The notes under the pieces were generated by a model. It was not told where the DNA came from, ran no database searches, and saw only the letters and a list, made by a program, of their open reading frames with translations. Positions 10,037-41,719 of a DNA stretch of 64,000 bases are shown piece by piece. Each line of letters begins with the position of its first letter. Position 1 is the first letter of the stretch. The position numbers and the translations under genes are program-made. The stretch is from the IMG/VR virus record IMGVR_UViG_3300037264_008423, positions 62,001 through 126,000 of that record; one strand, written 5' to 3'.

Positions 10037-10221
10037 ACCCTGTCGGAGCGTTGTTTTGCGCCGAAACCAGACCCCGTGAGTCGGCATTTGCACTCTGCCG
10101 TGGCGTCTGGAGCGAGGCGGAAAGTGAAGTGGTTCGGGTCCAAAGTTTGTGCAGGCTATGCGAGTATGGACACCGGATACGTCCGCTGGTTCGGTTTACC
10201 CGCGCCCTGCCCCGACAGGGT
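10037..10221 (+). ncRNA. Putative structured RNA containing a delocalised CRISPR-repeat copy
   Basis: Bracketed by a 10-bp inverted repeat ACCCTGTCGG (10037-10046) / CCGACAGGGT (10212-10221), with internal stems. 10142-10164 AAAGTTTGTGCAGGCTATGCGAG matches the 3' 23 nt of the array repeat at 21/23. Confidence 0.6.
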
Positions 10222-10235
10222 TTTGTATTTACGGT

Positions 10236-13200
10236 GTGCAGTTGGAGAATTTAGACGATGACGTGAGCGTGAAGGATCTGGCGGACTATCCGCGCTACCT
10301 GATCCGCAACCCTCAAGGCGACTACTGGTCCAATGACTGGGGATGGGTGGACTACGCCAGCGCCGACATTTTCAGTCACCTGGAAAAAGAGCGGTTCGAC
10401 CTGCCTTCGGAGGGTCAATGGGTTCCCCTGGCCGAATCCCGTCCGGTTATTGGTTTCCCCGGCAATGACTTGAAGGCGCTCCTGGGAGAGGATTTTGTAA
10501 ACAAAGCGGACGCCTTCCTTCAGGAGCAGGGTATGCTGTGCCTCCTGGAGTGGCACCCGCAGGGCCGTCGGGTGGGCCAGGCCCAGGCGGCGGGTCAGGC
10601 GCTCACGGCGCGCTTGAGCCTGAACAGCGCCGACAGCCAGCTCTTGCGCCGCGAGGGGAGCCTGAAGCTTTTAGATCAGTTGCGGGAGAGCGTGCGCGGG
10701 TTTCTGCCCAAGAGCGCCGAGAGCCGGGTCCGGGTGGTTCCCCAGCGTCCCCAGTATGACCGCTGGAACGACCGCTGGAACCTGGAGCTGGTGGTCTTGG
10801 AGGCGTCCGAGGACGACTTGGAGTCCAAAGAGGTCTATTTTGACGATGATCCACCTGAATTTGCCGCTCCCCAGGGCCTTAGCCCGGAGGGAGAGCGCGC
10901 CCGGCAGATCATTGTCCAGGTGCTTCGGCGCAATGGCGATCTGGATTCACGCGGTCAAAAGCATGTTTTCTATACCCCCGAACAATGGGCGCTAAAGGCG
11001 GATGAGCATGTTAAGGACGGGGTATTAGTGGTCGTTCACGATGGCGGCAGCCACGCTCCTTACTTTCACATGTCCTACGCGGCTGAATTAATGCTGAGCC
11101 GGATGGACCTGGCCCTGCGCCGGGAGGGATTTCAAATTTACCCCTACGCCCCTCATTACTCGGTGATTGCTCCGGTGGAACATGACGAGGCTAACCAGTG
11201 GTTTGTGCGCCAGATCGAGGATTGGTTCCAGCGAAACCCGGACCCGGCTGCGGTGCCCGGCGAGGAGCCGCCGCCCCCGGCAGCCACAGGGAATGTCCCG
11301 GAGAGCTTGGAGGACGATGACGATGTAAACTGGAAGGACCTGCAACTGCCGCTGGACAAAGAGGCGGCGATCCGGCACGTGTTTCGGCAGGCGGGGCTGA
11401 AGATCACGTCGATTCAGGAAGTGCCTGAAGACCAGGACTGGGGTGAGCTGGGGCACGCCCAGCGCATCATCGTCACCCGTGTTCCGCCCAATCCCGATCA
11501 GCCCTGGACTACGGACATAAACGCGTGGGAGGCAGTCGATGAGTTTTGTTTACGAATCAAGTCGGCCCTCTATGAGATCCTGGACACGGATGACATCGAG
11601 TGGCTGAGAAACTGGGGCCTGGAGGACCAAGCGCCGGAGGGCCGCCATTGGTATATCTGGTGGTATATCGGCGACCCGGACATCAAGGAAGAGCGGGAAA
11701 TGAATGAATCGGACGAGGACGACTTCGACGTGAAGGACTACTCGGACGACATCCCGCAATCGGATGACTTCCAGGCTTACCTGCTTCAGCGCGGATTTCG
11801 CAAGCTTTCGGGTCAGATGGGAGACTACTTCAAGAAGCTGCCTGCTGCTTACGCGCGGGTTCGGGTTTATCAGTATCCCAACTATGTCAGCTACCTGCTG
11901 GGCCTGAAGGAGGGCAACCACTGGTTTAAGTTGAGCGAGATGACCAACGCCTACCGGGTCCTGTCGGTTTTGCAGCAGCGAGGGCTGTTCGACGTGCGGG
12001 AGGGCCTGGACGAGGAGTTTGGAGCCGATGACGACCCGGAGCTGTATCTCACGCCCACGCCGAACCTTCAGGAGCGGTGGAATCAGTTCGAGGCGGCCTG
12101 GCGCAGTCAGTGGGCGCTCATACAGCGCGGGGTTAATTTCGGCCAGCGCACCGCTTACCTGGAGGGGATCATGCCCTCGCACCTGCGATGGCGCGCCGCG
12201 TTCCAAGAGGTTCAACGGCTCGTTTACGAGCACTTGGGGGGCGGACGCATCGCCGATTTCAAGTATCACCGGGATGGCTACGTCCTGTTTCACATCTACG
12301 ACCTGGGCGGCGTGGTGGAGAGCGAGGCGGAGAGTGAGGCGGATGATGTGGACTGGAAGGAGATCTCTTCCTATCCCAAGCCCAGCGCGCGGGAGGTCCG
12401 GGAAGCCATGAAGCGCCGGGGGATCGTCTATAATCGCCTGGTGCGCGGCAAGGATGTGGTGACCTTCCTGGGCTGGTTTAAGCGGGGTCAACTCGAACTG
12501 GATGTGCTGGCCCTGTTGCGGGAAGCGGCGGCGGAAGCGGGTCTTGACCAGGAGCACGTCCAGTTTTTCTATATGCCCGGCGCGGGTGAGGTCGCGATCA
12601 TCGCGGCGCGGACGGGCCTGTTGGAAAGCGAGGAGGATGAGGACTTTGACACTAGAACCTTGAAGGATGTGTCTGAAACTGGCAAGTTAGTGCCGGAAAT
12701 TGTGGCGGCGATGATCAAAAATGGGGTCATCCATATGATGGTTCGCAGGCCGTGGCAGCCCCCGCCCCACGACTTGCTGCTTTTTATGGGCTTGTGGCAG
12801 GCAGGCAAGACGGACCAGGAGGCCGCCCAGGTTTGCGCGGCGATCCTAAGAGATTTGCGCATTCCCATTACTTCCAGCTTGGACGACTGGTTCAACTATA
12901 TGCCCGGCTCCGGCGATTTCGACCTGGCGCTGCCTGCTTACCTGGTCTTGGACTGGGAGAGGTATGTGGTGGAATCCCAGGCTGGCCTGGTCCAAAAGAT
13001 CATCGAGGCCCAAGGCACGGTTCTAAACGTGCAAGTGGCAGACCGAGAGGAACTTGTCACGATTCAAGGCGAATGGAAGCCCGGAGCCACGGTTCAAGCT
13101 CTTGCCGAGGCCATTAGCGTGGATGCCAATCGGATTCAGTATGACGCCAAAAATGGCGAATTTACGGTGCTGGCAACCCGGCAAGCCCTTGTGCAAGAGG

Positions 13201-14765
13201 ATCAGGCGGATGGCAAGGCCAGCGACACCAAACGGGTCGCCATTGTGGCGGTGTTTCGGCAGAAGCAGGACGATCCCGCCTACGAGTGCCTGGTCTGCAA
13301 GCGCGAGGGGCCGCCAGCGGAGGGCGAATGGGTGATCCCAGGTGGTCATGCCGAGGAGGGCGAGGAGATCAAAGTCGCCGCGCGGCGTGAGTTGCAGGAA
13401 GAGGCGCACGTGGACCTGGGCGACCTGACCTTTGTTAAGACCATGCCCAATGAGACGGGGGACTTGGAAGTCCATGTCTTTGGAGCGATCTTGCCGGAAG
13501 GGGAGAGGGCCAAGGCCGGGGATGACGCGGAAAAGGTGAAATGGCTGCCCCTGGACGATCTGCCCAAGCTGAGCCTGGATAATGACAATTTGATCCGGGA
13601 AGTGGCCGAGGCGATGGAACTGCAACGGCTGCCCTCGGTGGACGAGAGCCTGCCCCCGCGCCTGGCCGACCAGATTCGGTCAAAGATAGCGGCCCTGAAG
13701 CCGCGCCGCGCGAGCCGCGCCGGTATGAGCTTCGAGGTTCAACAGCCAGAGGGATTTGTGGATCGGCTCATCGAGGGGATTGAGCGGGAAGCGGAGCAGT
13801 TGCAAGCCGACGCTCAGCCCGAACTGCGTCTCATGGACCTGATCGAGGATGCCTACAGCCAGACGGGCACCTATTTGTTTCCAGACGACCAGCAGGACGT
13901 GGAGCGATTGGCGCGCGTGCTGGTTCCTTTATTCAAAAAACCAGCCGGACGGCGGATCAAGGAGAGCGCGGACGCTCCCCCGCGCTATGGCACCGTTACC
14001 GACGAGGTAGTGCCTGCCCTGGAACAAGCTCTGGTGGAGATCTTTGGCCAGCGTTATGACTGGCTGGTGCCCCACGTGATCCAGCACATGGACCCGGAGA
14101 TCTCTTTGATCGCGATGGAGGGTGATCGCGTGATCGGTTTCTACATCCTGGGCCGCCGTTCGATCTTGGACGGCGTTAAGAGCGAGCACCTGAAGCCCAC
14201 TGAGGATTTGAAGCCCTATCGGCAGCGCCAGGGCATTGAGGGGGTAGCCCTGGGCATTGTGCCGGATCGCCGGGGCACGGGCCTGGGCAGCCGGTTCAAA
14301 GACTATCCACAAACCCTGGGCGCGGATTATATGTGGGGTCTGCAAATGCATGATCTGGATAACCTGAGCCACTGGCTCAAGCGCCGCCGCATTGTGGCGC
14401 GCAACCCGGAGATGGTCGCGACCCTCCAGGACTTTAAACCGGGGGCGGTAGCGGAGGCCAGCGAAGAGGATTTCGAGGCCAAGGACTTGGAAGATGATTT
14501 GCTGAATGACGAGCATTTTCAAAAGTTTGCCCAGGAGCACGGCCTACTCTACCACCCTGGCGCTAAAATGGTGCGCGACGTGCTGGATAATGTTTATGGT
14601 TCCATTTGGTTTAAGACCGGCCCCTATTTAAATCGGGAGGCCACGGTCCGCCAGTGGACCCAGGTGTTTTCCGACTATTTCAAGATCGATCCCGCCCGGA
14701 TGAAAGTGGCCTATTACCCGCCCAGTGGCGACATTATGGTCATGGTCACGAATCTGGTTCTGTAG
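10236..14765 (+). CDS. Modular polyprotein-like protein with 7 acidic tag linkers; cargo includes Nudix and GNAT domains
   Basis: Likely start GTG 10236 (TATTTA-N4-GTG). Nudix box GGHAEEGEEIKVAARRELQEEAHV at about 13341. GNAT motif A VALGIVPDRRGTGLG at about 14245. Recurring E(S/A)-acidic-KD tags. Confidence 0.75.
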   Translation: MQLENLDDDVSVKDLADYPRYLIRNPQGDYWSNDWGWVDYASADIFSHLEKERFDLPSEGQWVPLAESRPVIGFPGNDLKALLGEDFVNKADAFLQEQGMLCLLEWHPQGRRVGQAQAAGQALTARLSLNSADSQLLRREGSLKLLDQLRESVRGFLPKSAESRVRVVPQRPQYDRWNDRWNLELVVLEASEDDLESKEVYFDDDPPEFAAPQGLSPEGERARQIIVQVLRRNGDLDSRGQKHVFYTPEQWALKADEHVKDGVLVVVHDGGSHAPYFHMSYAAELMLSRMDLALRREGFQIYPYAPHYSVIAPVEHDEANQWFVRQIEDWFQRNPDPAAVPGEEPPPPAATGNVPESLEDDDDVNWKDLQLPLDKEAAIRHVFRQAGLKITSIQEVPEDQDWGELGHAQRIIVTRVPPNPDQPWTTDINAWEAVDEFCLRIKSALYEILDTDDIEWLRNWGLEDQAPEGRHWYIWWYIGDPDIKEEREMNESDEDDFDVKDYSDDIPQSDDFQAYLLQRGFRKLSGQMGDYFKKLPAAYARVRVYQYPNYVSYLLGLKEGNHWFKLSEMTNAYRVLSVLQQRGLFDVREGLDEEFGADDDPELYLTPTPNLQERWNQFEAAWRSQWALIQRGVNFGQRTAYLEGIMPSHLRWRAAFQEVQRLVYEHLGGGRIADFKYHRDGYVLFHIYDLGGVVESEAESEADDVDWKEISSYPKPSAREVREAMKRRGIVYNRLVRGKDVVTFLGWFKRGQLELDVLALLREAAAEAGLDQEHVQFFYMPGAGEVAIIAARTGLLESEEDEDFDTRTLKDVSETGKLVPEIVAAMIKNGVIHMMVRRPWQPPPHDLLLFMGLWQAGKTDQEAAQVCAAILRDLRIPITSSLDDWFNYMPGSGDFDLALPAYLVLDWERYVVESQAGLVQKIIEAQGTVLNVQVADREELVTIQGEWKPGATVQALAEAISVDANRIQYDAKNGEFTVLATRQALVQEDQADGKASDTKRVAIVAVFRQKQDDPAYECLVCKREGPPAEGEWVIPGGHAEEGEEIKVAARRELQEEAHVDLGDLTFVKTMPNETGDLEVHVFGAILPEGERAKAGDDAEKVKWLPLDDLPKLSLDNDNLIREVAEAMELQRLPSVDESLPPRLADQIRSKIAALKPRRASRAGMSFEVQQPEGFVDRLIEGIEREAEQLQADAQPELRLMDLIEDAYSQTGTYLFPDDQQDVERLARVLVPLFKKPAGRRIKESADAPPRYGTVTDEVVPALEQALVEIFGQRYDWLVPHVIQHMDPEISLIAMEGDRVIGFYILGRRSILDGVKSEHLKPTEDLKPYRQRQGIEGVALGIVPDRRGTGLGSRFKDYPQTLGADYMWGLQMHDLDNLSHWLKRRRIVARNPEMVATLQDFKPGAVAEASEEDFEAKDLEDDLLNDEHFQKFAQEHGLLYHPGAKMVRDVLDNVYGSIWFKTGPYLNREATVRQWTQVFSDYFKIDPARMKVAYYPPSGDIMVMVTNLVL

Positions 14766-34617: not shown

Positions 34618-35646
34618 TTAGTGAGCATAGGGGTAGTATTGAGATTTGCCGTTGATAAAAGAAGTAAACGTAAAGTTACAGGGATTTTCCGAGGCATAGA
34701 CCAGGCCTTGGTAGCTTGGCCGGATCTTTTGGTCCAGCCACGGGGCGCGGTCCGCCGCGTCGAGGTAATCCAGGTGAGTCACCATAATTTGGTCGGGCAC
34801 AGCCAATTTAAGGCTATAGTCAAAATCGGCATTGGACCAGGTGAAGACGCGGCGTTCTCGACCGGTTACCGTGCCGTGTTCCGGGGGGCGCTTGAGCAGG
34901 GACCACGAGATCTCGGTGCCGCCCGTGGGACCGCTGTTGCCGCCCACGCGGATGGGGAACGTCCGGTAAACGCCCACGTAGTGCCATTGCAGCCGGGCCA
35001 GGCCGTTGCGCGCCACGGCGGCCTGGGGCAGGGTGGACCGGCTGGTCACGTAAGGGTAGTGGCCAAAATTGGTGTCCAGCAGAAGACCTTGGCCGCACTC
35101 GAAGACGCACGTATCGAAGTTACCGGGCAGGTCCTCAATCAAGTCCATATACTCCCGTGGCGCGAGCGCGCACCAGTCCGGGTTAACTTTTTTGATCCGG
35201 TGTCCGATGACGCACTCTTCCTGGCGAAAGACATGCTTGCGGTAGCGAGCCGCGCCGCCGCCTGTGCAGGTGCTCGCGATGCGCTCTCTTAGTTGAATGT
35301 CTTGTTCGGTCTGGACGCAGTTTTCGTCGCAATGAGCGGCGTTGACATGGATATACAACCGCGCGGGAGCTATTCCGTGGGCCGCGCGGTAGTCGCAAAC
35401 AGTGGACCAGTCCTCCGTCAGGACTTCCAAGTCAATGACGGCATCCGGTCCCAGGATCACCGCGTCGGCGAAAAAAGCTCCGGCAGGCAGGGCACGCAGG
35501 GAACCGGCGCGGCAGGTATGGCCGCTGTTGGGGGCGTTCTCTCCAATCACCACGGACCGGCCTTTGTGCTGTTGGAGCAGGGCTTCGGCCACGCAGCCTT
35601 TTCCCTCCAAGCCGTATTGTCCGCCGTAAACACAATAGCATCTCAT
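34618..35646 (-). CDS. Adenylosuccinate synthetase family (PurZ/PurZ0-like) protein
   Basis: GGQYGLEGKG P-loop, APNSGHT, FECGQGLLLD, HYPYVTS, FPIRVGGNSGP, GTVTGRERR, VTHLDY. The 342-aa length is typical of the short archaeal-PurA/PurZ0 type. Confidence 0.8.
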   Translation of the reverse strand: MRCYCVYGGQYGLEGKGCVAEALLQQHKGRSVVIGENAPNSGHTCRAGSLRALPAGAFFADAVILGPDAVIDLEVLTEDWSTVCDYRAAHGIAPARLYIHVNAAHCDENCVQTEQDIQLRERIASTCTGGGAARYRKHVFRQEECVIGHRIKKVNPDWCALAPREYMDLIEDLPGNFDTCVFECGQGLLLDTNFGHYPYVTSRSTLPQAAVARNGLARLQWHYVGVYRTFPIRVGGNSGPTGGTEISWSLLKRPPEHGTVTGRERRVFTWSNADFDYSLKLAVPDQIMVTHLDYLDAADRAPWLDQKIRPSYQGLVYASENPCNFTFTSFINGKSQYYPYAH

Positions 35647-35649
35647 AAT

Positions 35650-37332
35650 TTAGTCTTCAGGGTCACAGTCATCGTCCGGGTCAGGGACATCCCAGTTGAT
35701 ATCTTCCTGCGTGAGCAGGTCGCCTTTCTTACGCCTGCCGGTGGGCAGGGTGAGGACCGAGTAGCGGTCCAGGTTGATACGGTCATGGGCCGCATCAACG
35801 CGCTTTCTGACCGTGTGGAAGCTGCCTTTAATGGGCAGATCCGTTCCCGCCACGGTATCGACGATGTTGGTCTCCATATTGTAGATCAGAACATCATAGC
35901 GCGCGTCCGGGCTGTCAGCGGGTTGTTTCGCGGGGGCTTGGGGTTTGGGTGGGGTGTTCATTGGGGTATTAGTTGCCATAAAATCCTGAGTTCTCGCCCA
36001 AGTCCTGGGACGGTTCGTAGTCGCGATGGAGCGCGATGACGTTCTGGCCGAACTCAAGCTTATCCGCCATACTACGCAGGATGGCGGCCATTTCGGCCAT
36101 GTTCAGCTCGATCTTAGGCTTGGCGGCAGTGAGCAGCTCCATCAGGTGATGACGGTTGATCAGCACCGGGACAGCAGTCTCCGCATCCGTTTGGCGCACG
36201 ACATTGAACAGGGTGTCTTCTACTTGTTTGGGTGACATCGTAGAGTAAGCGACCACTGGGCGCGTTTGTCCGAGCAGGGCTGGAGCTGGTCGCATAGCTC
36301 CTGGGTCAGCGCGTAGGCTTCCCGCTCCCGGCTTTCTTTATTGACCAATTCAAGGCGCTGCCGGACGGCCATGACTCGCACCACGGTCAGGACTGCTTCC
36401 TCGCGGTCGCAGCGCACCAGGACCTTAGCGCCCTGGAGCCGCAGCATGCCTTCGGGTTTAGTAATGTCCAAGTTCATTTTTTAAGTTTACTTTCGGCGCT
36501 GTGGATATACTCCAAGATTTGGCGGCGTTCCTGCTCCACCTTATCGAGGTCGATCTCATAGAACTGAGCTAGCAGTTTTTCCGGGCGCTCGCGCTTTTCG
36601 ATCAGGATGTTGTTTTGATAGCAGCACAGGACAATCCCCCGCGTGCCCAGCCATTCCAGGAACTCGCCAATATGTTGCGAGCGCGGGGCGGCGGCTTTCA
36701 GTTTTTCAAGTTCGGGGGTCGCGGGATAAGCGGTGTCAATACTCATGGTGTTTAGGCGTTGGAGTTGGTAAAGGTAAATTTCGTGTGGCACAAGGGGCAG
36801 TGCCAGGTTTCTTTCCAGGTCACGACCTCCATGCCAAGGATCTTGCTTTCGTGCTCGTCCACCGTGGCCGGGGTGTGGTGGAGGCGATGCTGGGCGCGCT
36901 CGGTCGGATCTTTGGTGGTAATGAACTTGATGCCACTCATAGGGGTAATTCTTCGATTTTGATGGTCTGGGTATAGTTTTCGCGCCGGGCCAGGTCCTCG
37001 GCGGTGCGGACAGCCTCGTGGTGGTCGCTCGTGCCGCCCAGGTCGTGGGTGGATTCGTCCGCTCGTTGAACGATGACATGGTATTTTCGGCGCTGGTCGA
37101 TCCCGCGCCGGATCACGCTCATTTTGGTGATGGCGGGGGTTTGGCCGCTGGGATAGGCCACGTAAATGTAGCGGGAAGACCATTCCGGGCGGAACTCCTC
37201 GTCATAGGCCATGCCGCTGGTGCTGATGATCACGCCCACGGGACGCTTGCGGATGTCGGCAAGGTCCTGGGCTTTCATCTTGGTTTCTAAATTGATGGCA
37301 TAGGAGCCGGGTTGGGGAAGTTTCATGGGCAC
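35650..37332 (-). other. Cluster of small hypothetical genes (ORFs ending at 35650, 35969, 36220, 36474, 36752 and 36937)
   Basis: Tightly packed short ORFs on the minus strand. Confidence 0.5.
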
Positions 37333-37955
37333 TTAATTTCCAGGCGGGTGACCCGGTGGACGTAGTGGGGGGTGATGTTGAGGCTGACGTTGTGCTCGCC
37401 GTGAGGATTCAGGTCGTCCCCGTAGGCGGCTGAAAAGTGGCACATGCAGACGAACTGGGCGACTTCGTTCCAGAATCGCTGCCTAAACACCCTGGGGCAG
37501 TCCCGCGCGGCAGCCACTTCTTGCTGCCAGGTGTCGGTGATTCCCGTCACGGCGTTTTCCTGGATGATCCGGTGCGCTTCCGGGTCCTGTTGCCGCTCCA
37601 GGAGCAGGGCGACACCGGCGACGCTTTCCACGACGAAAGCGACCCGGTTTTTAAAGCCGATCTCATATTCAGTGTCGGTGGTTTTCACTTTCGCCGCTGT
37701 CAGAGCTTGCCAGTCTTTCAGGGCGGCTTCCGCGTCCACCACCACCAGGCGCGCGTCATTGATCAGGTTGCCCAGGTTTTTGTATTCGCGCTGGTTGTTC
37801 TCGATGAAGGCCCGGCTGACAAACTGATAGTAAAGCTGGCGCAGGGTCAGGTCGAAGCCCTGCTGCTGATACTCGGCGATGATGACGTTGGCCTTTTCGA
37901 TTTTCTCCAGGCTGTCCGGCTCGAACTTCTTCTTGCGATATTTAATTTTAGGCAT
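37323..37955 (-). CDS. Probable chimeric gene: N-terminus of a widespread phage TLRQLYY protein fused to unrelated sequence
   Basis: MPKIKY...TLRQLYYQFVSR..IEN.QREYKNLG.LINDARL, then an abrupt change at about 37745. Confidence 0.5.
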   Translation of the reverse strand: MPKIKYRKKKFEPDSLEKIEKANVIIAEYQQQGFDLTLRQLYYQFVSRAFIENNQREYKNLGNLINDARLVVVDAEAALKDWQALTAAKVKTTDTEYEIGFKNRVAFVVESVAGVALLLERQQDPEAHRIIQENAVTGITDTWQQEVAAARDCPRVFRQRFWNEVAQFVCMCHFSAAYGDDLNPHGEHNVSLNITPHYVHRVTRLEIKCP

Positions 37956-38462: not shown

Positions 38463-39389
38463 CTATTTCACTTGAAGGTTGGGCGGAGGGCAGCCGTTGC
38501 AGGAAATTTGAGTAGTGATGGTCAGCCCCCATGCGGCAGCCTGCACTTTGCACGTCTCAAGAACTTCTGAATCAGGCTTGGAGATTGAGACCGCTGCGAG
38601 GCCGTGGGTCCTAGTTTCCTTTGTGCCATCGCCAATCCAGAGGCCGAAGAAGTAGGGATCAACTTCCGGGTTTGGACGTGTTGGAAAATTGACCATCGCT
38701 GGTTTGAACAACTTCCAGTTCATGTCGGGGCGATTCTGGTTTCGTGTTTCACTCAGAAGTTGATTCAGCGCGACATCACGGACTATGCCCTTGCGGTGGT
38801 TTGTTCCAGCTAAGGTCAAGACGTGAACATTGTTGCAGGTCCATGCCGCACCTTTGATGGGAACGATTTTGAACATCGGAGCTTTGCCCTGAGTTGTTGA
38901 GAGCACCCGCCGTGGTGATCCGTCTGGTCCCATCAAAAGGTCACCTGTCACGATGTCGGCGTTTCGTTTAATGGTGCCATCGTGCAGCAGGATAGGGACA
39001 TCGAGGCCAAGACACTTGCCGGTCCCCGCGCGAGCGCGCACCACGAGCGATCCGGTGCCGGAGTGGAACCATTTGAAGATGGCAATTTGCTCGTCGGACC
39101 AGGGATACTTGGTTTCGGGCAGCACGAACGAACGGGTGGTTTCGGCGGTTACAGCGGCTTGGTTCGGTTCCTGATACCAATTGACGGTCCAGGAGCCATT
39201 GATCAGTTTGGGACTGATGCCCAAGTCGTGGAGTTGGGGCTTGTGCGCGCGCCACAGGGACCAGAATGCGCCGTGCGGGATAGCTGTGCGCACTTGGCGC
39301 AGTCCGCGCGCGGTCTTGGCCAGGCGAGGCTGATTCCAGGCTAGCATCGCTTCCAGAGTTTCGTTCGTAATTTCGTTGGTCGTATTCAT
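38463..39389 (-). pseudogene. Truncated UvrD/Rep-like SF1 helicase interrupted by an incomplete intein
   Basis: WSDEQIAIF (Q motif), LVVRARAGTGK (Walker A), then immediately CLGLD...GDLLMGPDG.PRRV...CNNVHVL (intein blocks A/B) and PYFFGLWIGDG (LAGLIDADG block C). The stop at 38463 comes before any C-terminal HN or helicase motif II. Confidence 0.8.
38466..39014 (-). mobile_element. Intein N-terminal part (Hint-N plus first LAGLIDADG motif), truncated
   Basis: Cys1 codon at 39014-39012 directly after GTGK. Confidence 0.8.
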
Positions 39390-40436: not shown

Positions 40437-41087
40437 TTAATTGACTTTCTGGAGGATACATTGCATGGGCCAAAAATGGATGAAGGCTGTGTCGCCTTGC
40501 AGTTTGTCCATGATGGCAATTCGCGCCAGCAGGGCGGCGTCAAAACGAGAGCGGTCGTTACAGAAATCGGTGGTGGGGGGATTGAGACTAAGGCCGGGCC
40601 GCACCTGGACATAGGGCGTGAGGTCGTAGTAGGTGTTGGCCAAATCCTCGATGGTGTAGAGACCGCCCGGTTTCAAGTGGCCCCAGGCGGCATCCAGGCT
40701 CCCCAGCATGTGCTCCACCAGGTGACTGCCGTCATCGATAATAATGTCAAAGGCGGTGTCGGCGGCGGCGGCGGCGGCGGCGCGCGCCCGGTGAAGAACT
40801 TGCGGGTCGCACTGATGGCCCAGGATCACGGAGATGCGCTCCCCGTAAAACTGGTTGGCCTGCGGGTCCTGGTCAATGCCGATCACACTGGCGTTGCGGA
40901 AATAGTCGCGCCAGACTTTCAGAGAGGAACCCCGATACACTCCCAGTTCCAGCACGCCGCGCACTTGATCCCGGATGGGCGCGAAATAAGTTTCGTAAAC
41001 ATCCAGGTAAGATCGGCCACAAAAGGTGTGGTAGCGGTCCGCCTTGTCGGTTTGGTGCCGGAGGCCCAGTGATTGGAGCGGGTTCAT
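40437..41087 (-). CDS. Class I SAM-dependent O-methyltransferase
   Basis: VLELGVYRGSSL, VIGIDQD, FDIIIDDGSH, LKPGGLYTIED. Confidence 0.85.
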   Translation of the reverse strand: MNPLQSLGLRHQTDKADRYHTFCGRSYLDVYETYFAPIRDQVRGVLELGVYRGSSLKVWRDYFRNASVIGIDQDPQANQFYGERISVILGHQCDPQVLHRARAAAAAAADTAFDIIIDDGSHLVEHMLGSLDAAWGHLKPGGLYTIEDLANTYYDLTPYVQVRPGLSLNPPTTDFCNDRSRFDAALLARIAIMDKLQGDTAFIHFWPMQCILQKVN

Positions 41088-41719
41088 ACTTTGCAGAAAA
41101 TGGCCTGTTTGGACCAGAAGTGCAGAAAGCGAATGTCCCCCTGGTGGAGATCCATGATCTTTAGCTGGTCGGCGAAAAAGCGGTCCAGCTTAGATCGGTC
41201 CAGCTTAAAGTCGGTGGTCTCTGGCGGATTGTGCTTCTGCCCCGGCCATTCCCTCCAGGAATTGGAGATGTCACCCCAGTGAGACACTTGCAGGTCCTCG
41301 ATAATGTAAAAGCCGCCCGGTTTAACGCGCGGCCAGAGCAACAAGTAGCTGGCAATCTGGTGGTCGATGACGTGGCTGGCGTCGTCAATGACGACATCAA
41401 AAAGTTGATCCGGGGCGACCAGGCTCAAAGCATTGGGATCAATTTGGCTGCCCGTGACTACCTGGATGCGCGGTCCATAGTCGGCCTTGGCCTGCGGGTC
41501 CAGGTCCAGCCCCCATATTTGCGCGTTGGGAAAGTAATCGCGCCAGACTTGCAGGGAGCGACCCTTGAAGACGCCCAGCTCCAGCAGGCAGCGGACATCG
41601 CAACGGATGCCGCGAAAGTAGATTTGATAAACGTCCAGGTAGCTGAGGTCGCGGAACGTGTGGAGGTTGTCCACTTTATCCGTGCCGTATTGAGTGCCGA
41701 GCAGGTGTAATTTTCTCAT
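41084..41719 (-). CDS. Class I SAM-dependent O-methyltransferase (paralogue of the adjacent gene)
   Basis: LLELGVFKGRSL, IWGLDLD, FDVVIDDASH, VKPGGFYIIED. Confidence 0.85.
   Translation of the reverse strand: MRKLHLLGTQYGTDKVDNLHTFRDLSYLDVYQIYFRGIRCDVRCLLELGVFKGRSLQVWRDYFPNAQIWGLDLDPQAKADYGPRIQVVTGSQIDPNALSLVAPDQLFDVVIDDASHVIDHQIASYLLLWPRVKPGGFYIIEDLQVSHWGDISNSWREWPGQKHNPPETTDFKLDRSKLDRFFADQLKIMDLHQGDIRFLHFWSKQAIFCKV

What the first reader, a model, noticed from the sequence alone, without database searches (positions are those of the whole stretch)
34618..35646. PurZ0-like enzyme with an unusual Leu at the key PurA-Asp13/PurZ-Ser position
Seen: the P-loop reads GGQYG-L-EGKG (codon TTG, one transition from Ser TCG), with PNSGHT, PIRVGGNSG and TVT..RR features. 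Known: PurA has catalytic Asp here, while PurZ/PurZ0, which make the 2-aminoadenine (Z) precursor, have Ser. Inference: a Z-genome pathway remnant, a pseudo-enzyme, or new substrate specificity for a different base modification. No datZ or mazZ is visible in this window.
Basis: partly seen in the sequence, partly recalled or inferred. Interest (0 to 1): 0.62.

Follow-up and report, generated by a model that had tools for sequence, protein, structure and literature searches.

The report
PurZ-like enzyme with remodelled base pocket
A giant phage from a sediment metagenome carries an intact relative of the enzyme that makes the precursor of the unusual DNA base 2-aminoadenine. Three residues lining the pocket for the purine substrate have changed in ways seen in none of about 107 relatives, so it probably no longer handles guanine nucleotides as those relatives do.

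Summary
Window 34618-35646 (-) encodes a full-length 342-aa PurA/PurZ-fold protein whose P-loop reads GGQYG-L-EGKG, with codon 13 = TTG at 35608-35610.

It is neither PurZ0 nor PurZ in the strict sense. It belongs to a separate, well-supported third lineage of about 107 metagenomic Ser-type proteins that keep a PurA/PurZ0-like GTP-type pocket (T-H-L-D-Y).

Leu13 is not an isolated change. At the 91 columns that are at least 85% conserved in this lineage, the protein has a residue found in no other member at exactly three sites: S13L, T234V and A258G. All three map to the published acceptor-base pocket of PurZ (p about 5e-4). Every other catalytic, aspartate-binding and GTP-binding residue is intact, and its branch is the shortest in the clade.

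An independent assembly of the probable source run reproduces the sequence with no differences. The 96%-complete 238-kb genome has no datZ, mazZ, dutZ, dmtZ-like or purB gene, and its only polymerase match falls far below the DpoZ cut-offs. A related complete jumbo phage with the Ser form also lacks the four companion families searched there, so being solo does not mark a remnant.

My best reading is an active ligase with altered purine specificity (confidence about 0.42). An impaired allele (about 0.28) and unchanged PurZ-type activity (about 0.18) remain open. The Leu form is a singleton and is untested biochemically.

The parts
34618..35646 (-). purZ-like gene (P0001, 342 aa plus stop); short-form PurA/PurZ fold
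   Evidence: ORF and translation. PF00709, PHROG 1211 and NF038379 below its cut-off. AF2 model pLDDT 93.7, pTM 0.92. Best structural matches are S-2L and phiVC8 PurZ, P. horikoshii PurA and PurZ0, TM 0.77-0.82.
35644..35646 (-). true ATG start, 4 nt after the stop of the upstream gene
   Evidence: Sequence. The N-terminal residues CVYGGQYG match the family consensus. Residues 2-8 form strand beta1 in the model. The public gene call instead starts at codon 13.
35596..35625 (-). P-loop GGQYGLEGKG (residues 8-17)
   Evidence: G12, G15 and K16 are invariant in alignment A1.
35608..35610 (-). codon 13 TTG = Leu, at the PurA Asp13 / PurZ Ser position (S-2L S23, phiVC8 S14)
   Evidence: Ser in 106/106 aligned relatives. 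Mapping to S-2L S23. Reproduced in Logan's contig.
35515..35532 (-). PNSGHT (residues 39-44), with N40 and the catalytic His43 (E. coli N38/H41)
34945..34947 (-). codon 234 GTG = Val in PIRVGG. Equivalent to E. coli V273 and S-2L V241. Every other member of the lineage has Thr.
   Evidence: The role of S-2L V241 in the base/sugar pocket is described in PMC8342488.
34873..34875 (-). codon 258 GGC = Gly. Equivalent to S-2L T273, phiVC8 T262 and E. coli G298. Relatives have Ala (95), Thr (9), Val (1) or Ser (1).
   Evidence: [quoted passage not shown]
34849..34872 (-). TVTGRERR (residues 259-266), the aspartate/ribose loop. R263 = E. coli R303 and R265 = E. coli R305.
   Evidence: The loop EHGTVTGRERR closely resembles the archaeal PurA loop EYGTVTGRRRR.
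34765..34779 (-). T-H-L-D-Y (residues 290-294), the nucleotide-donor base motif. Asp293 = E. coli D333 (guanine-recognising). PurZ has N or Q here.
   Evidence: Asp is present in 107/107 other members of the lineage.

Best explanation
The gene encodes a genuine, intact member of a third, previously unnamed lineage of phage Ser-type PurA homologues. This lineage is sister-level to PurZ and PurZ0 and has a GTP-type donor pocket.

The residues for the family's two-step chemistry are all present. In that chemistry the NTP phosphorylates O6 of a 6-oxopurine nucleotide, and L-aspartate then displaces the phosphate to give an N6-succinyl product.

In this protein the pocket that holds the acceptor purine has been remodelled at three sites. 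Ser13 became Leu, Thr234 is Val, and Ala/Thr258 is Gly. Each change removes a hydroxyl or methyl and gives the PurA state (V, G) or an uncharged group that I judge close in shape to PurA's Asp (L).

I infer that the enzyme is still a ligase but no longer selects guanine's 2-amino group as its relatives are presumed to. The most likely preferred substrate is a hypoxanthine nucleotide (IMP or dIMP), which would feed adenine rather than 2-aminoadenine nucleotides. It is not part of a recognisable Z-genome pathway in this phage.

Shown here: gene integrity, lineage, the three unique pocket changes, retention of the other ligand residues, and absence of the companion genes. Inferred: that the enzyme is active, and which substrate it prefers.
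For: Pocket changes:
- Exactly three residues are unique to P0001 at the 91 columns that are at least 85% conserved. All three lie in the literature-defined base pocket (S-2L S23, V241, T273). Hypergeometric p = 4.6e-4.
- As a control, the 107 other members have 65 such unique residues in total, and only 2 fall in that pocket.
- From the most common relative state the three changes need at least four nucleotide substitutions (TCN>TTG, ACN>GTG, GCN>GGC). One sequencing error cannot explain them.

Integrity:
- G12, G15, K16, N40, H43, T126, Q186, T201, R233, T261, R263, R265, R266 and D293 are all retained.
- The path from the crown node is 0.77 against a mean of 1.70 for the others, all of which are longer. 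There is no relaxed-selection signal.
- A related jumbo phage (G006) shares 72 ORFs at a median 37% identity, and the PurZ-like pair is 46.6% identical. The gene is therefore conserved above the genome average.

Sequence reliability and fold:
- The sequence is reproduced by a second assembler.
- The fold is confident and PurZ/PurA-like.

Literature:
- S23 lies next to N2 of dGMP, and V241 lies at the base/sugar pocket (PMC8342488).
- S14, F12 and T262 accommodate the 2-amino group, and S14D abolishes selectivity (bioRxiv 10.1101/2025.10.22.683976).
Against: - The Leu/Val/Gly form is a singleton. No second sequence shows that it is maintained.
- In S-2L PurZ the equivalent Ser also touches the triphosphate. 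From memory of the E. coli literature, PurA Asp13 is the catalytic base and a Mg2+ ligand. A Leu could therefore cripple catalysis rather than retune it.
- V234 is the state of all outgroups and may be ancestral rather than a new change. With only L13 and G258 counted, the enrichment weakens to about p = 0.006.
- The enrichment test was devised after seeing the data.
- No model coordinates were available, so I could not measure distances.
- The function of the Ser-type relatives themselves has never been assayed.
- Only contigs, not raw reads, were available from one probable source run, so minor alleles are invisible.
Confidence: 0.42

Rival explanations
1. Impaired or dead allele (pseudo-enzyme or recent loss of function). 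The S13L transition removes a polar group at the junction of purine, gamma-phosphate and metal. The protein folds and may still bind nucleotides, but it no longer turns over. It would be an accessory gene on its way out, or one repurposed as a binder.
For: - The position is Ser in every one of 106 aligned relatives and in 147/147 published phage PurZ/PurZ0. It is Asp in 99% of PurA.
- S-2L S23 contacts the triphosphate tail.
- TTG is one transition from TCG.
- The genome has no datZ, mazZ, dutZ, DUF4406 or purB.
- It is a singleton.
Against: - There is no frameshift or stop, and no other catalytic residue is lost.
- It has the shortest branch in the clade.
- The other unique substitutions are concentrated in the same pocket rather than scattered.
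- Ser is not a catalytic base in PurZ. It lies 3.7 A from N2, and Gly occurs naturally at this site in cellular relatives.
- The Ser-form gene is also solo in the related complete phage G006, so missing partners do not mark decay.
Confidence: 0.28
2. Unchanged PurZ-type function. The enzyme still converts dGMP to the 2-aminoadenine precursor. Leu13 is tolerated because Gly258 opens compensating space, and the phage, like its Ser-type jumbo relatives, makes Z without the known helper genes.
For: - A bulkier residue at 13 is paired with a smaller residue at 258, the two positions reported to flank the 2-amino group.
- The rest of the active site is intact.
- The gene is conserved between related jumbo phages.
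Against: - The pocket loses the hydroxyls at positions 13 and 234 that its relatives keep there.
- No enzyme for clearing dATP or supplying dGMP was found, and the polymerase match falls far below the DpoZ cut-offs: 26 and 20 bits against 500 and 350.
- No member of this lineage has been shown to make Z.
Confidence: 0.18
3. Sequencing or assembly artefact. The true codon is TCG (Ser).
For: TTG and TCG differ by a single base. There is only one sample, and only contigs could be laid on it.
Against: - Two assemblers agree at word depth 15 with 0 differences over 2.5 kb.
- The Leu is accompanied by two further unique pocket substitutions that need at least three more nucleotide changes.
Confidence: 0.03

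Closest known systems
PurZ (N6-succino-2-amino-2'-deoxyadenylate synthase; phiVC8 6FM1/6TNH, S-2L 7ODX)
   Same: - Short-form PurA fold (TM 0.80-0.81).
- Best NCBIfam model hit (NF038379).
- P-I-R-V-G-G loop of the same length.
- Val at the V241 position.
- His, Lys, Asn, Gln, Thr and Arg ligand set conserved.
- Grouped next to PurZ in both trees, though without support.
   Different: - Leu instead of the invariant Ser.
- Gly instead of T273/T262.
- Donor-base motif T-H-L-D-Y with Asp (GTP type) instead of N-F-x-(N/Q)-Y (ATP type).
- 147 bits against a cut-off of 300.
- 25-34% identity.
- No datZ or mazZ.
PurZ0 (Gordonia phage Archimedes 7VF6, Ghobes)
   Same: - Ser-type radiation.
- Guanine-recognising Asp retained in the donor pocket, so a GTP donor is predicted.
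- TM 0.82.
   Different: - Separate clade (PurZ0 SH-aLRT 99.5, this lineage 100).
- Leu instead of Ser, and Gly instead of Thr at 258.
- No dutZ or dmtZ, and the polymerase match is far below the DpoZ-1 cut-off.
Archaeal short PurA (Pyrococcus horikoshii 5K7X; Archaeoglobaceae PurA used here)
   Same: - Same length class and fold (TM 0.77).
- V at 234, G at 258, G-R at 262-263.
- Loop EHGTVTGRERR against EYGTVTGRRRR.
- T-x-x-D GTP motif.
   Different: - No catalytic Asp13 (Leu instead).
- NF003295 gives 113 bits against a cut-off of 368.
- Phylogenetically nested in the Ser-type radiation, not with PurA.
Unnamed third lineage of metagenomic Ser-type homologues (P0003-P0109)
   Same: - 40-51% identity.
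- Monophyletic with the query (SH-aLRT 100).
- Shared signatures GENxPNSGHT, FECxQG, TSRSTLP, PIRxGGxSGPTGG and T[HF]xDY.
- Also found solo in a related jumbo phage.
   Different: The others have the pocket triad S13/T234/(A or T)258 in 104 of 106 aligned members. The query alone has L/V/G. Many members sit in 24-34 kb contigs with a protein-primed PolB, a DutZ-like dUTPase and DUF4406, none of which this genome has.

Membership tests
PurA (adenylosuccinate synthetase, EC 6.3.4.4) | PF00709 domain and fold | tested here: met
   98 bits against a cut-off of 27. AF2 model matches PurA structures.
PurA (adenylosuccinate synthetase, EC 6.3.4.4) | Catalytic Asp13 in GDEGKG | tested here: not met
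   Leu13. Asp is 99% conserved in PurA (PMC12884076).
PurA (adenylosuccinate synthetase, EC 6.3.4.4) | Score over the NCBIfam equivalog cut-offs | tested here: not met
   NF003295 gives 113 against 368, NF002223 gives 91 against 402, TIGR00184 gives 90 against 396.
PurA (adenylosuccinate synthetase, EC 6.3.4.4) | GTP-specific (N/T)KxD-type Asp (E. coli D333) | tested here: met
   T290-H-L-D293 aligns with TKLD.
PurA (adenylosuccinate synthetase, EC 6.3.4.4) | IMP + GTP + Asp gives adenylosuccinate | not testable with these tools
   Needs an enzyme assay.
PurZ | Ser at the Asp13 position | tested here: not met
   Leu13.
PurZ | Thr at phiVC8 T262 / S-2L T273 | tested here: not met
   Gly258.
PurZ | ATP-type donor pocket (N/Q in place of D333, stacking Phe) | tested here: not met
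   D293 and H291.
PurZ | NCBIfam NF038379 over its cut-off | tested here: not met
   147 bits against 300.
PurZ | Monophyly with characterised PurZ | tested here: inconclusive
   Placed as sister to PurZ, with SH-aLRT of only 22.6. FastTree local support is 1.0 for the joint node.
PurZ | Z-cluster companions datZ and mazZ/DUF550 in the genome | tested here: not met
   PF12917 gave no match and PF04447 gave only a 12-bit fragment with a stop. tblastn found nothing.
PurZ0 | Monophyly with Archimedes/Ghobes PurZ0 | tested here: not met
   PurZ0 forms its own clade (99.5), and the query lineage is separate (100).
PurZ0 | Ser at the Asp13 position | tested here: not met
   Leu13.
PurZ0 | Guanine-nucleotide donor pocket like archaeal PurA | tested here: met
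   Asp293 retained as in Ghobes S-F-A-D. This is a sequence-level test only.
PurZ0 | dutZ (all 98 PurZ0 genomes), dmtZ and DpoZ-1 in the genome | tested here: not met
   PF00692 gave no match and PF14359 gave no match. NF038380 gave 26 bits against a cut-off of 500. tblastn with the Ghobes proteins found nothing.
Third Ser-type lineage (P0003-P0109) | Monophyly and shared sequence signatures | tested here: met
   SH-aLRT 100, stem length 0.90. Stem length 1.32 in FastTree. Shared motifs.
Third Ser-type lineage (P0003-P0109) | Pocket triad Ser13 / Thr234 / Ala or Thr258 | tested here: not met
   L/V/G in the query. S/T/A in 95, S/T/T in 9, S/T/V in 1 and S/T/S in 1.

The most novel reading that the evidence does not exclude
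The L13/V234/G258 pocket defines a new substrate specificity within the PurZ radiation. One form of this would be a natural Asp-less succinyl-adenylate synthetase that works on hypoxanthine nucleotides or on another 6-oxopurine (deoxy)nucleotide. That would give this jumbo phage a purine-nucleotide route distinct from both PurA and PurZ, and would show how the gatekeeper triad sets specificity. A wider corollary is that the surrounding lineage of about 107 proteins is a third, GTP-dependent Z-type (or Z-related) system, linked to protein-primed PolB phages and to jumbo phages.
Probability: 0.25. Interest if true: 0.8.

Novelty: new variant of a known kind. Interest (0 to 1): 0.6.

Why it matters
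PurZ enzymes are the entry point to 2-aminoadenine (Z) DNA, and they interest both phage biology and synthetic genetics. Specificity for guanine over hypoxanthine nucleotides has been assigned to a few pocket residues, chiefly the Asp-to-Ser switch.

This protein is a natural experiment on those residues. All three pocket positions have changed together on an otherwise intact enzyme. Assaying it and its back-mutants would test directly which residues set purine specificity, and whether the scaffold can work with neither Asp nor Ser.

The work also exposes an uncharacterised third lineage of Ser-type PurA homologues with a GTP-type pocket. In small PolB phages it sits beside DutZ-like and NDT-like genes. 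In jumbo phages it is solo. That widens where Z-type or related purine chemistry should be looked for.

Tried and rejected
- **IQ-TREE with 1000 ultrafast bootstraps** timed out twice. I used FastTree and IQ-TREE -fast with SH-aLRT instead. Deep nodes between PurZ, PurZ0 and the new lineage remain poorly resolved.
- **Reads check.** Only one run was served, as contigs, and it is probably the source sample. Allele frequencies could not be seen.
- **Search for other Leu variants by DNA pattern.** There were 12 hits in the metagenome collection, all chance matches in unrelated ORFs, and none in IMG/VR. Variants with a different residue before the Tyr/Phe were not covered.
- **Z-pathway companions in the own genome.** I used tblastn with S-2L, SH-Ab 15497 and Ghobes proteins, phmmer with the neighbours of clade members, and six-frame Pfam searches. 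Only a PolA-like gene far below the DpoZ cut-offs and an RNR turned up. HD (PF01966/PF13023), MazG (PF03819) and NDT (PF05014) were not searched separately.
- **Codon argument for a recent mutation, rejected.** TTG makes up 17% of Leu codons in this genome and 5 of 27 in the gene.
- **'Solo gene means remnant', rejected.** The related complete phage G006 with the Ser form is also solo.
- **My first mapping of position 234** to E. coli I265 was wrong. I corrected it to V273.
- **Model coordinates** are not exposed, so I could not measure distances around Leu13.
- **Neighbouring genes** gave no functional lead. They are a topoisomerase fragment, a Hint-domain ORF, two methyltransferases and hypotheticals.
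Full report
**1. The observation**

Window 34618-35646 on the minus strand is an uninterrupted 342-codon ORF. Its product, P0001, begins MRCYCVYGGQYGLEGKG. Codon 13 is TTG at 35608-35610.

Family scans give Pfam PF00709 at 98 bits, PHROG 1211 ('2-aminooxy adenylosuccinate synthetase') at 166 bits, and NCBIfam PurZ NF038379 at 147 bits. The last is the best model but lies below its cut-off of 300. Archaeal-type PurA NF003295 follows at 113 bits against a cut-off of 368.

An AlphaFold2 model built on 61 aligned sequences is confident (pLDDT 93.7, pTM 0.92). Its best structural matches are S-2L PurZ 7ODX, phiVC8 PurZ 6FKO/6TNH/6FM1, P. horikoshii PurA 5K7X and PurZ0 7VF6, with TM 0.77-0.82.

The public gene call for this record (P0002, 330 aa) starts at the TTG of codon 13. 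I consider that a mis-call for three reasons:
- The ATG at 35646 lies 4 nt after the upstream gene's stop.
- Residues 5-12 are identical to the family consensus CVYGGQYG.
- Residues 2-8 form the first strand of the central sheet in the model.

**2. Is the Leu real?**

Only one public run holds the stretch. It is a sediment metagenome that is probably the source of the record, and it is served as Logan contigs. An 11.3-kb Logan contig covers 34000-36500 with no differences at word depth 15. This rules out an error specific to one assembler. It is not independent sampling, and it cannot show minor alleles. As shown below, the Leu does not stand alone, which makes a single-base artefact very unlikely.

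**3. Where the protein belongs**

Known phage PurZ and PurZ0 proteins are only 25-34% identical to it. The word-based search of 5.8 billion proteins found a distinct family of about 107 metagenomic proteins (P0003-P0109) at 40-51% identity and 224-297 bits. Scores then drop to 153 bits or less.

I built trees with the following references:
- canonical long PurA from Mesorhizobium, Variovorax and a Loki archaeon;
- a short archaeal PurA;
- cellular Ser-type homologues;
- PurZ from S-2L, SH-Ab 15497, ZP6 and Ochrobactrum phage OH;
- PurZ0 from Archimedes, Ghobes, Urla and Cicada.

These trees put P0001 and the family in one clade with a long stem (FastTree stem 1.32; IQ-TREE SH-aLRT 100, stem 0.90). 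The clade is separate from PurZ0, which has SH-aLRT 99.5. It is placed beside PurZ, but without support in IQ-TREE (22.6). P0001 and P0091 branch first within the clade.

'PurZ0-like' is therefore not right as a classification. It is right in one functional respect. The donor-base motif is T-H-L-D-Y, and the Asp is kept in 107/107 other members. This aligns with the guanine-recognising TKLD of PurA and with S-F-A-D of PurZ0. ATP-using PurZ has N or Q at that position (PMC8342488). The lineage is not mentioned in the papers I could search.

**4. The Leu is one of three unique changes, all in one pocket**

All 106 aligned relatives have Ser at position 13. The published survey found Ser in 147/147 phage PurZ/PurZ0 and Asp in 99% of PurA (PMC12884076).

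I took the 91 alignment columns that are at least 85% conserved among the 107 other members. P0001 has a residue found in no other member at exactly three of them: S13L, T234V and A258G. Through the alignment with S-2L PurZ, these map to S23, V241 and T273, which correspond to phiVC8 S14, V236 and T262.

The literature defines these positions independently:
- S-2L residues Y21, G22, S23, N49, A50, T132, Q190 and V241 form the pocket for the base of dGMP. S23 lies 3.7 A from N2, and V241 sits against C2' of the sugar (PMC8342488).
- S14, F12 and T262 accommodate the 2-amino group, and S14D abolishes selectivity (bioRxiv 10.1101/2025.10.22.683976).

The statistics are as follows:
- The chance that three of three unique residues fall in these 8 of 91 columns is about 5e-4.
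- If V234 is not counted as a new change, it is about 0.006.
- As a control, the other 107 members have 65 unique residues at conserved columns between them, and only 2 fall in this pocket.
- At the 80% threshold two more unique residues appear, E101V and I257H. The second is adjacent to G258.

The test was framed after seeing the data. The residue set, however, came from published structures.

Across the family the triad is S/T/A in 95 members, S/T/T in 9, S/T/V in 1, S/T/S in 1, and L/V/G only here. Val234 and Gly258 are the states of PurA (E. coli V273 and G298). By my own judgement, not a computed result, Leu is an uncharged side chain close in shape to PurA's Asp. The loop EHGTVTGRERR is nearly that of archaeal PurA, EYGTVTGRRRR.

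**5. No sign of decay**

All other ligand and catalytic positions are retained. These are:
- G12, G15 and K16;
- N40 and H43;
- T126, Q186, T201 and R233;
- T261, R263, R265 and R266;
- D293.

P0001's path from the clade's crown node is 0.77 substitutions per site, against a mean of 1.70 (minimum 1.16) for the others. It is the slowest-evolving member, not an accelerated one. It violates 4 of the 82 positions that are at least 90% conserved, which is within the range seen in other members (0-12, median 1). TTG makes up 17% of Leu codons genome-wide, so the codon says nothing about how recent the change is.

**6. Genome context**

The window lies in a single 238,436-bp IMG/VR record that CheckV rates 96% complete. 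The searches for Z-pathway companions used these methods:
- six-frame Pfam searches for the DatZ family (PF12917), MazZ/DUF550 (PF04447), dUTPase/DutZ (PF00692), DUF4406 (PF14359) and PurB (PF00206);
- tblastn with S-2L, SH-Ab 15497 and Ghobes Z-cluster proteins;
- phmmer with the neighbours of clade members.

None of them found a companion gene. One search showed that the reference proteins hit these Pfam families. The only DNA polymerase match, a PolA-like 1125-aa frame at genome 175-178 kb, scores 26 and 20 bits against the DpoZ cut-offs of 500 and 350.

The gene's immediate neighbours are small hypothetical genes, a topoisomerase N-terminal fragment, a Hint-domain ORF and two methyltransferases.

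**7. Context of the relatives**

In 24-34 kb contigs the Ser-type gene sits with a protein-primed family-B polymerase and DUF4406 (NDT-like). This holds in 4 of 4 contigs examined. There is usually also a dUTPase-like gene 28-33% identical to Ghobes DutZ gp55, a conserved 175-183-aa unknown, ThyX, and once a PurB-like lyase. That arrangement resembles the DutZ/DmtZ set of PurZ0 phages (PMC12884076).

In large phages the gene is solo. The complete 230-kb phage G006, which has direct terminal repeats, carries the Ser form (P0053) and has none of the four companion families. G006 is a relative of this genome. They share 72 ORFs at a median 37% identity in syntenic blocks, and the PurZ-like pair is 46.6% identical. 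The trees do not resolve the two proteins as sisters and their immediate neighbours differ, so orthology is plausible but not shown.

Two consequences follow. Absence of datZ and mazZ does not mark this copy as a remnant. And the gene has been kept, better conserved than the average shared gene, through a long divergence.

**8. Interpretation**

The pattern is an intact ligase apparatus, a GTP-type donor site, slow evolution, and three unique substitutions confined to the acceptor-base pocket that replace hydroxyl-bearing or larger residues with apolar, PurA-like ones. This is what a change of purine specificity looks like, and it is not what random decay looks like.

I infer that the enzyme still carries out NTP-dependent 6-O-phosphorylation and aspartate addition. 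I also infer that it no longer favours guanine's 2-amino group, with IMP or dIMP as the most likely substrates (confidence about 0.42).

The main rival is an impaired or dead allele (about 0.28). The equivalent Ser in S-2L PurZ also touches the triphosphate. In PurA the residue is the catalytic base and a metal ligand; that statement comes from my memory of the E. coli literature and was not checked here. The Leu form is also a singleton.

Unchanged dGMP activity, with Gly258 compensating for the bulk of Leu13, remains possible (about 0.18). An artefact is unlikely (about 0.03).

**9. Novelty**

This is a new variant of a known kind. It has an unprecedented pocket triad in a PurZ-family enzyme, within a lineage that itself appears uncharacterised. 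It rests on one metagenomic genome and no biochemistry, so I score interest at 0.6.

Noticed in passing
Loci L011 (1647-7553), L012 (5122-13452), L013 (4633-11215), L200 (3691-11898): The roughly 107-member Ser-type lineage often sits in 24-34 kb contigs beside several recurring genes. These are a protein-primed family-B DNA polymerase (PF03175), a dUTPase-like gene 28-33% identical to Ghobes DutZ, a conserved 175-183-aa unknown, DUF4406 (NDT-like), ThyX, and once a PurB-like lyase. It looks like a third Z-type gene cluster, and I found no description of it in the papers searched.
   Followed up: partly
G006 = IMGVR_UViG_3300032770_000002 (L010/L106, L207-L218); whole genome G000: The window's 238-kb phage and a complete 230-kb phage with direct terminal repeats are related jumbo phages. 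They share 72 ORFs at a median 37% aa identity in syntenic blocks. G006 encodes a tubulin and a cpYpsA-domain protein next to its Ser-type purZ-like gene. No tubulin homologue was found in G000.
   Followed up: partly
Loci L014-L093, L094-L105 (bacterial and archaeal genomes): Many bacterial and archaeal chromosomes carry a short Ser-type PurA-like gene (GSEGKGK). Examples are Solirubrobacterales, Acidobacteriota, Mesorhizobium qingshengii, Variovorax sp. OV700, Bradyrhizobium ivorense and DPANN archaea. A few have Gly instead (Archaeoglobaceae, Geobacteraceae). Where checked, the gene sits beside a canonical Asp-type PurA. The function of these cellular paralogues is unknown.
   Followed up: partly
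window 35608-35646: The public gene call for this protein starts at the TTG of codon 13. That cuts off strand beta1 and half of the P-loop. Automated annotation would therefore hide the Leu altogether.
   Followed up: yes
window 37323-37955 and 38463-39389; genome C1:162462-163226: A 210-aa ORF matches only the first 70 residues of a phage topoisomerase family. Further along the same strand lies a Hint-domain (Hom_end_hint) ORF. The ribonucleotide reductase homologue was matched only over a 765-nt piece. Together these suggest genes split by inteins or homing endonucleases.
   Followed up: no
window 10149-14765 (+): A 1538-aa ORF in the block of large, probably structural, plus-strand genes carries an internal NUDIX hydrolase domain at residues 1044-1148 (phrog_1198, E 2e-17).
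   Followed up: no
window 40437-41087 and 41084-41719 (-): Two adjacent Methyltransf_24-type methyltransferase genes lie about 5 kb upstream of the purZ-like gene on the same strand. Their targets are unknown.
   Followed up: no
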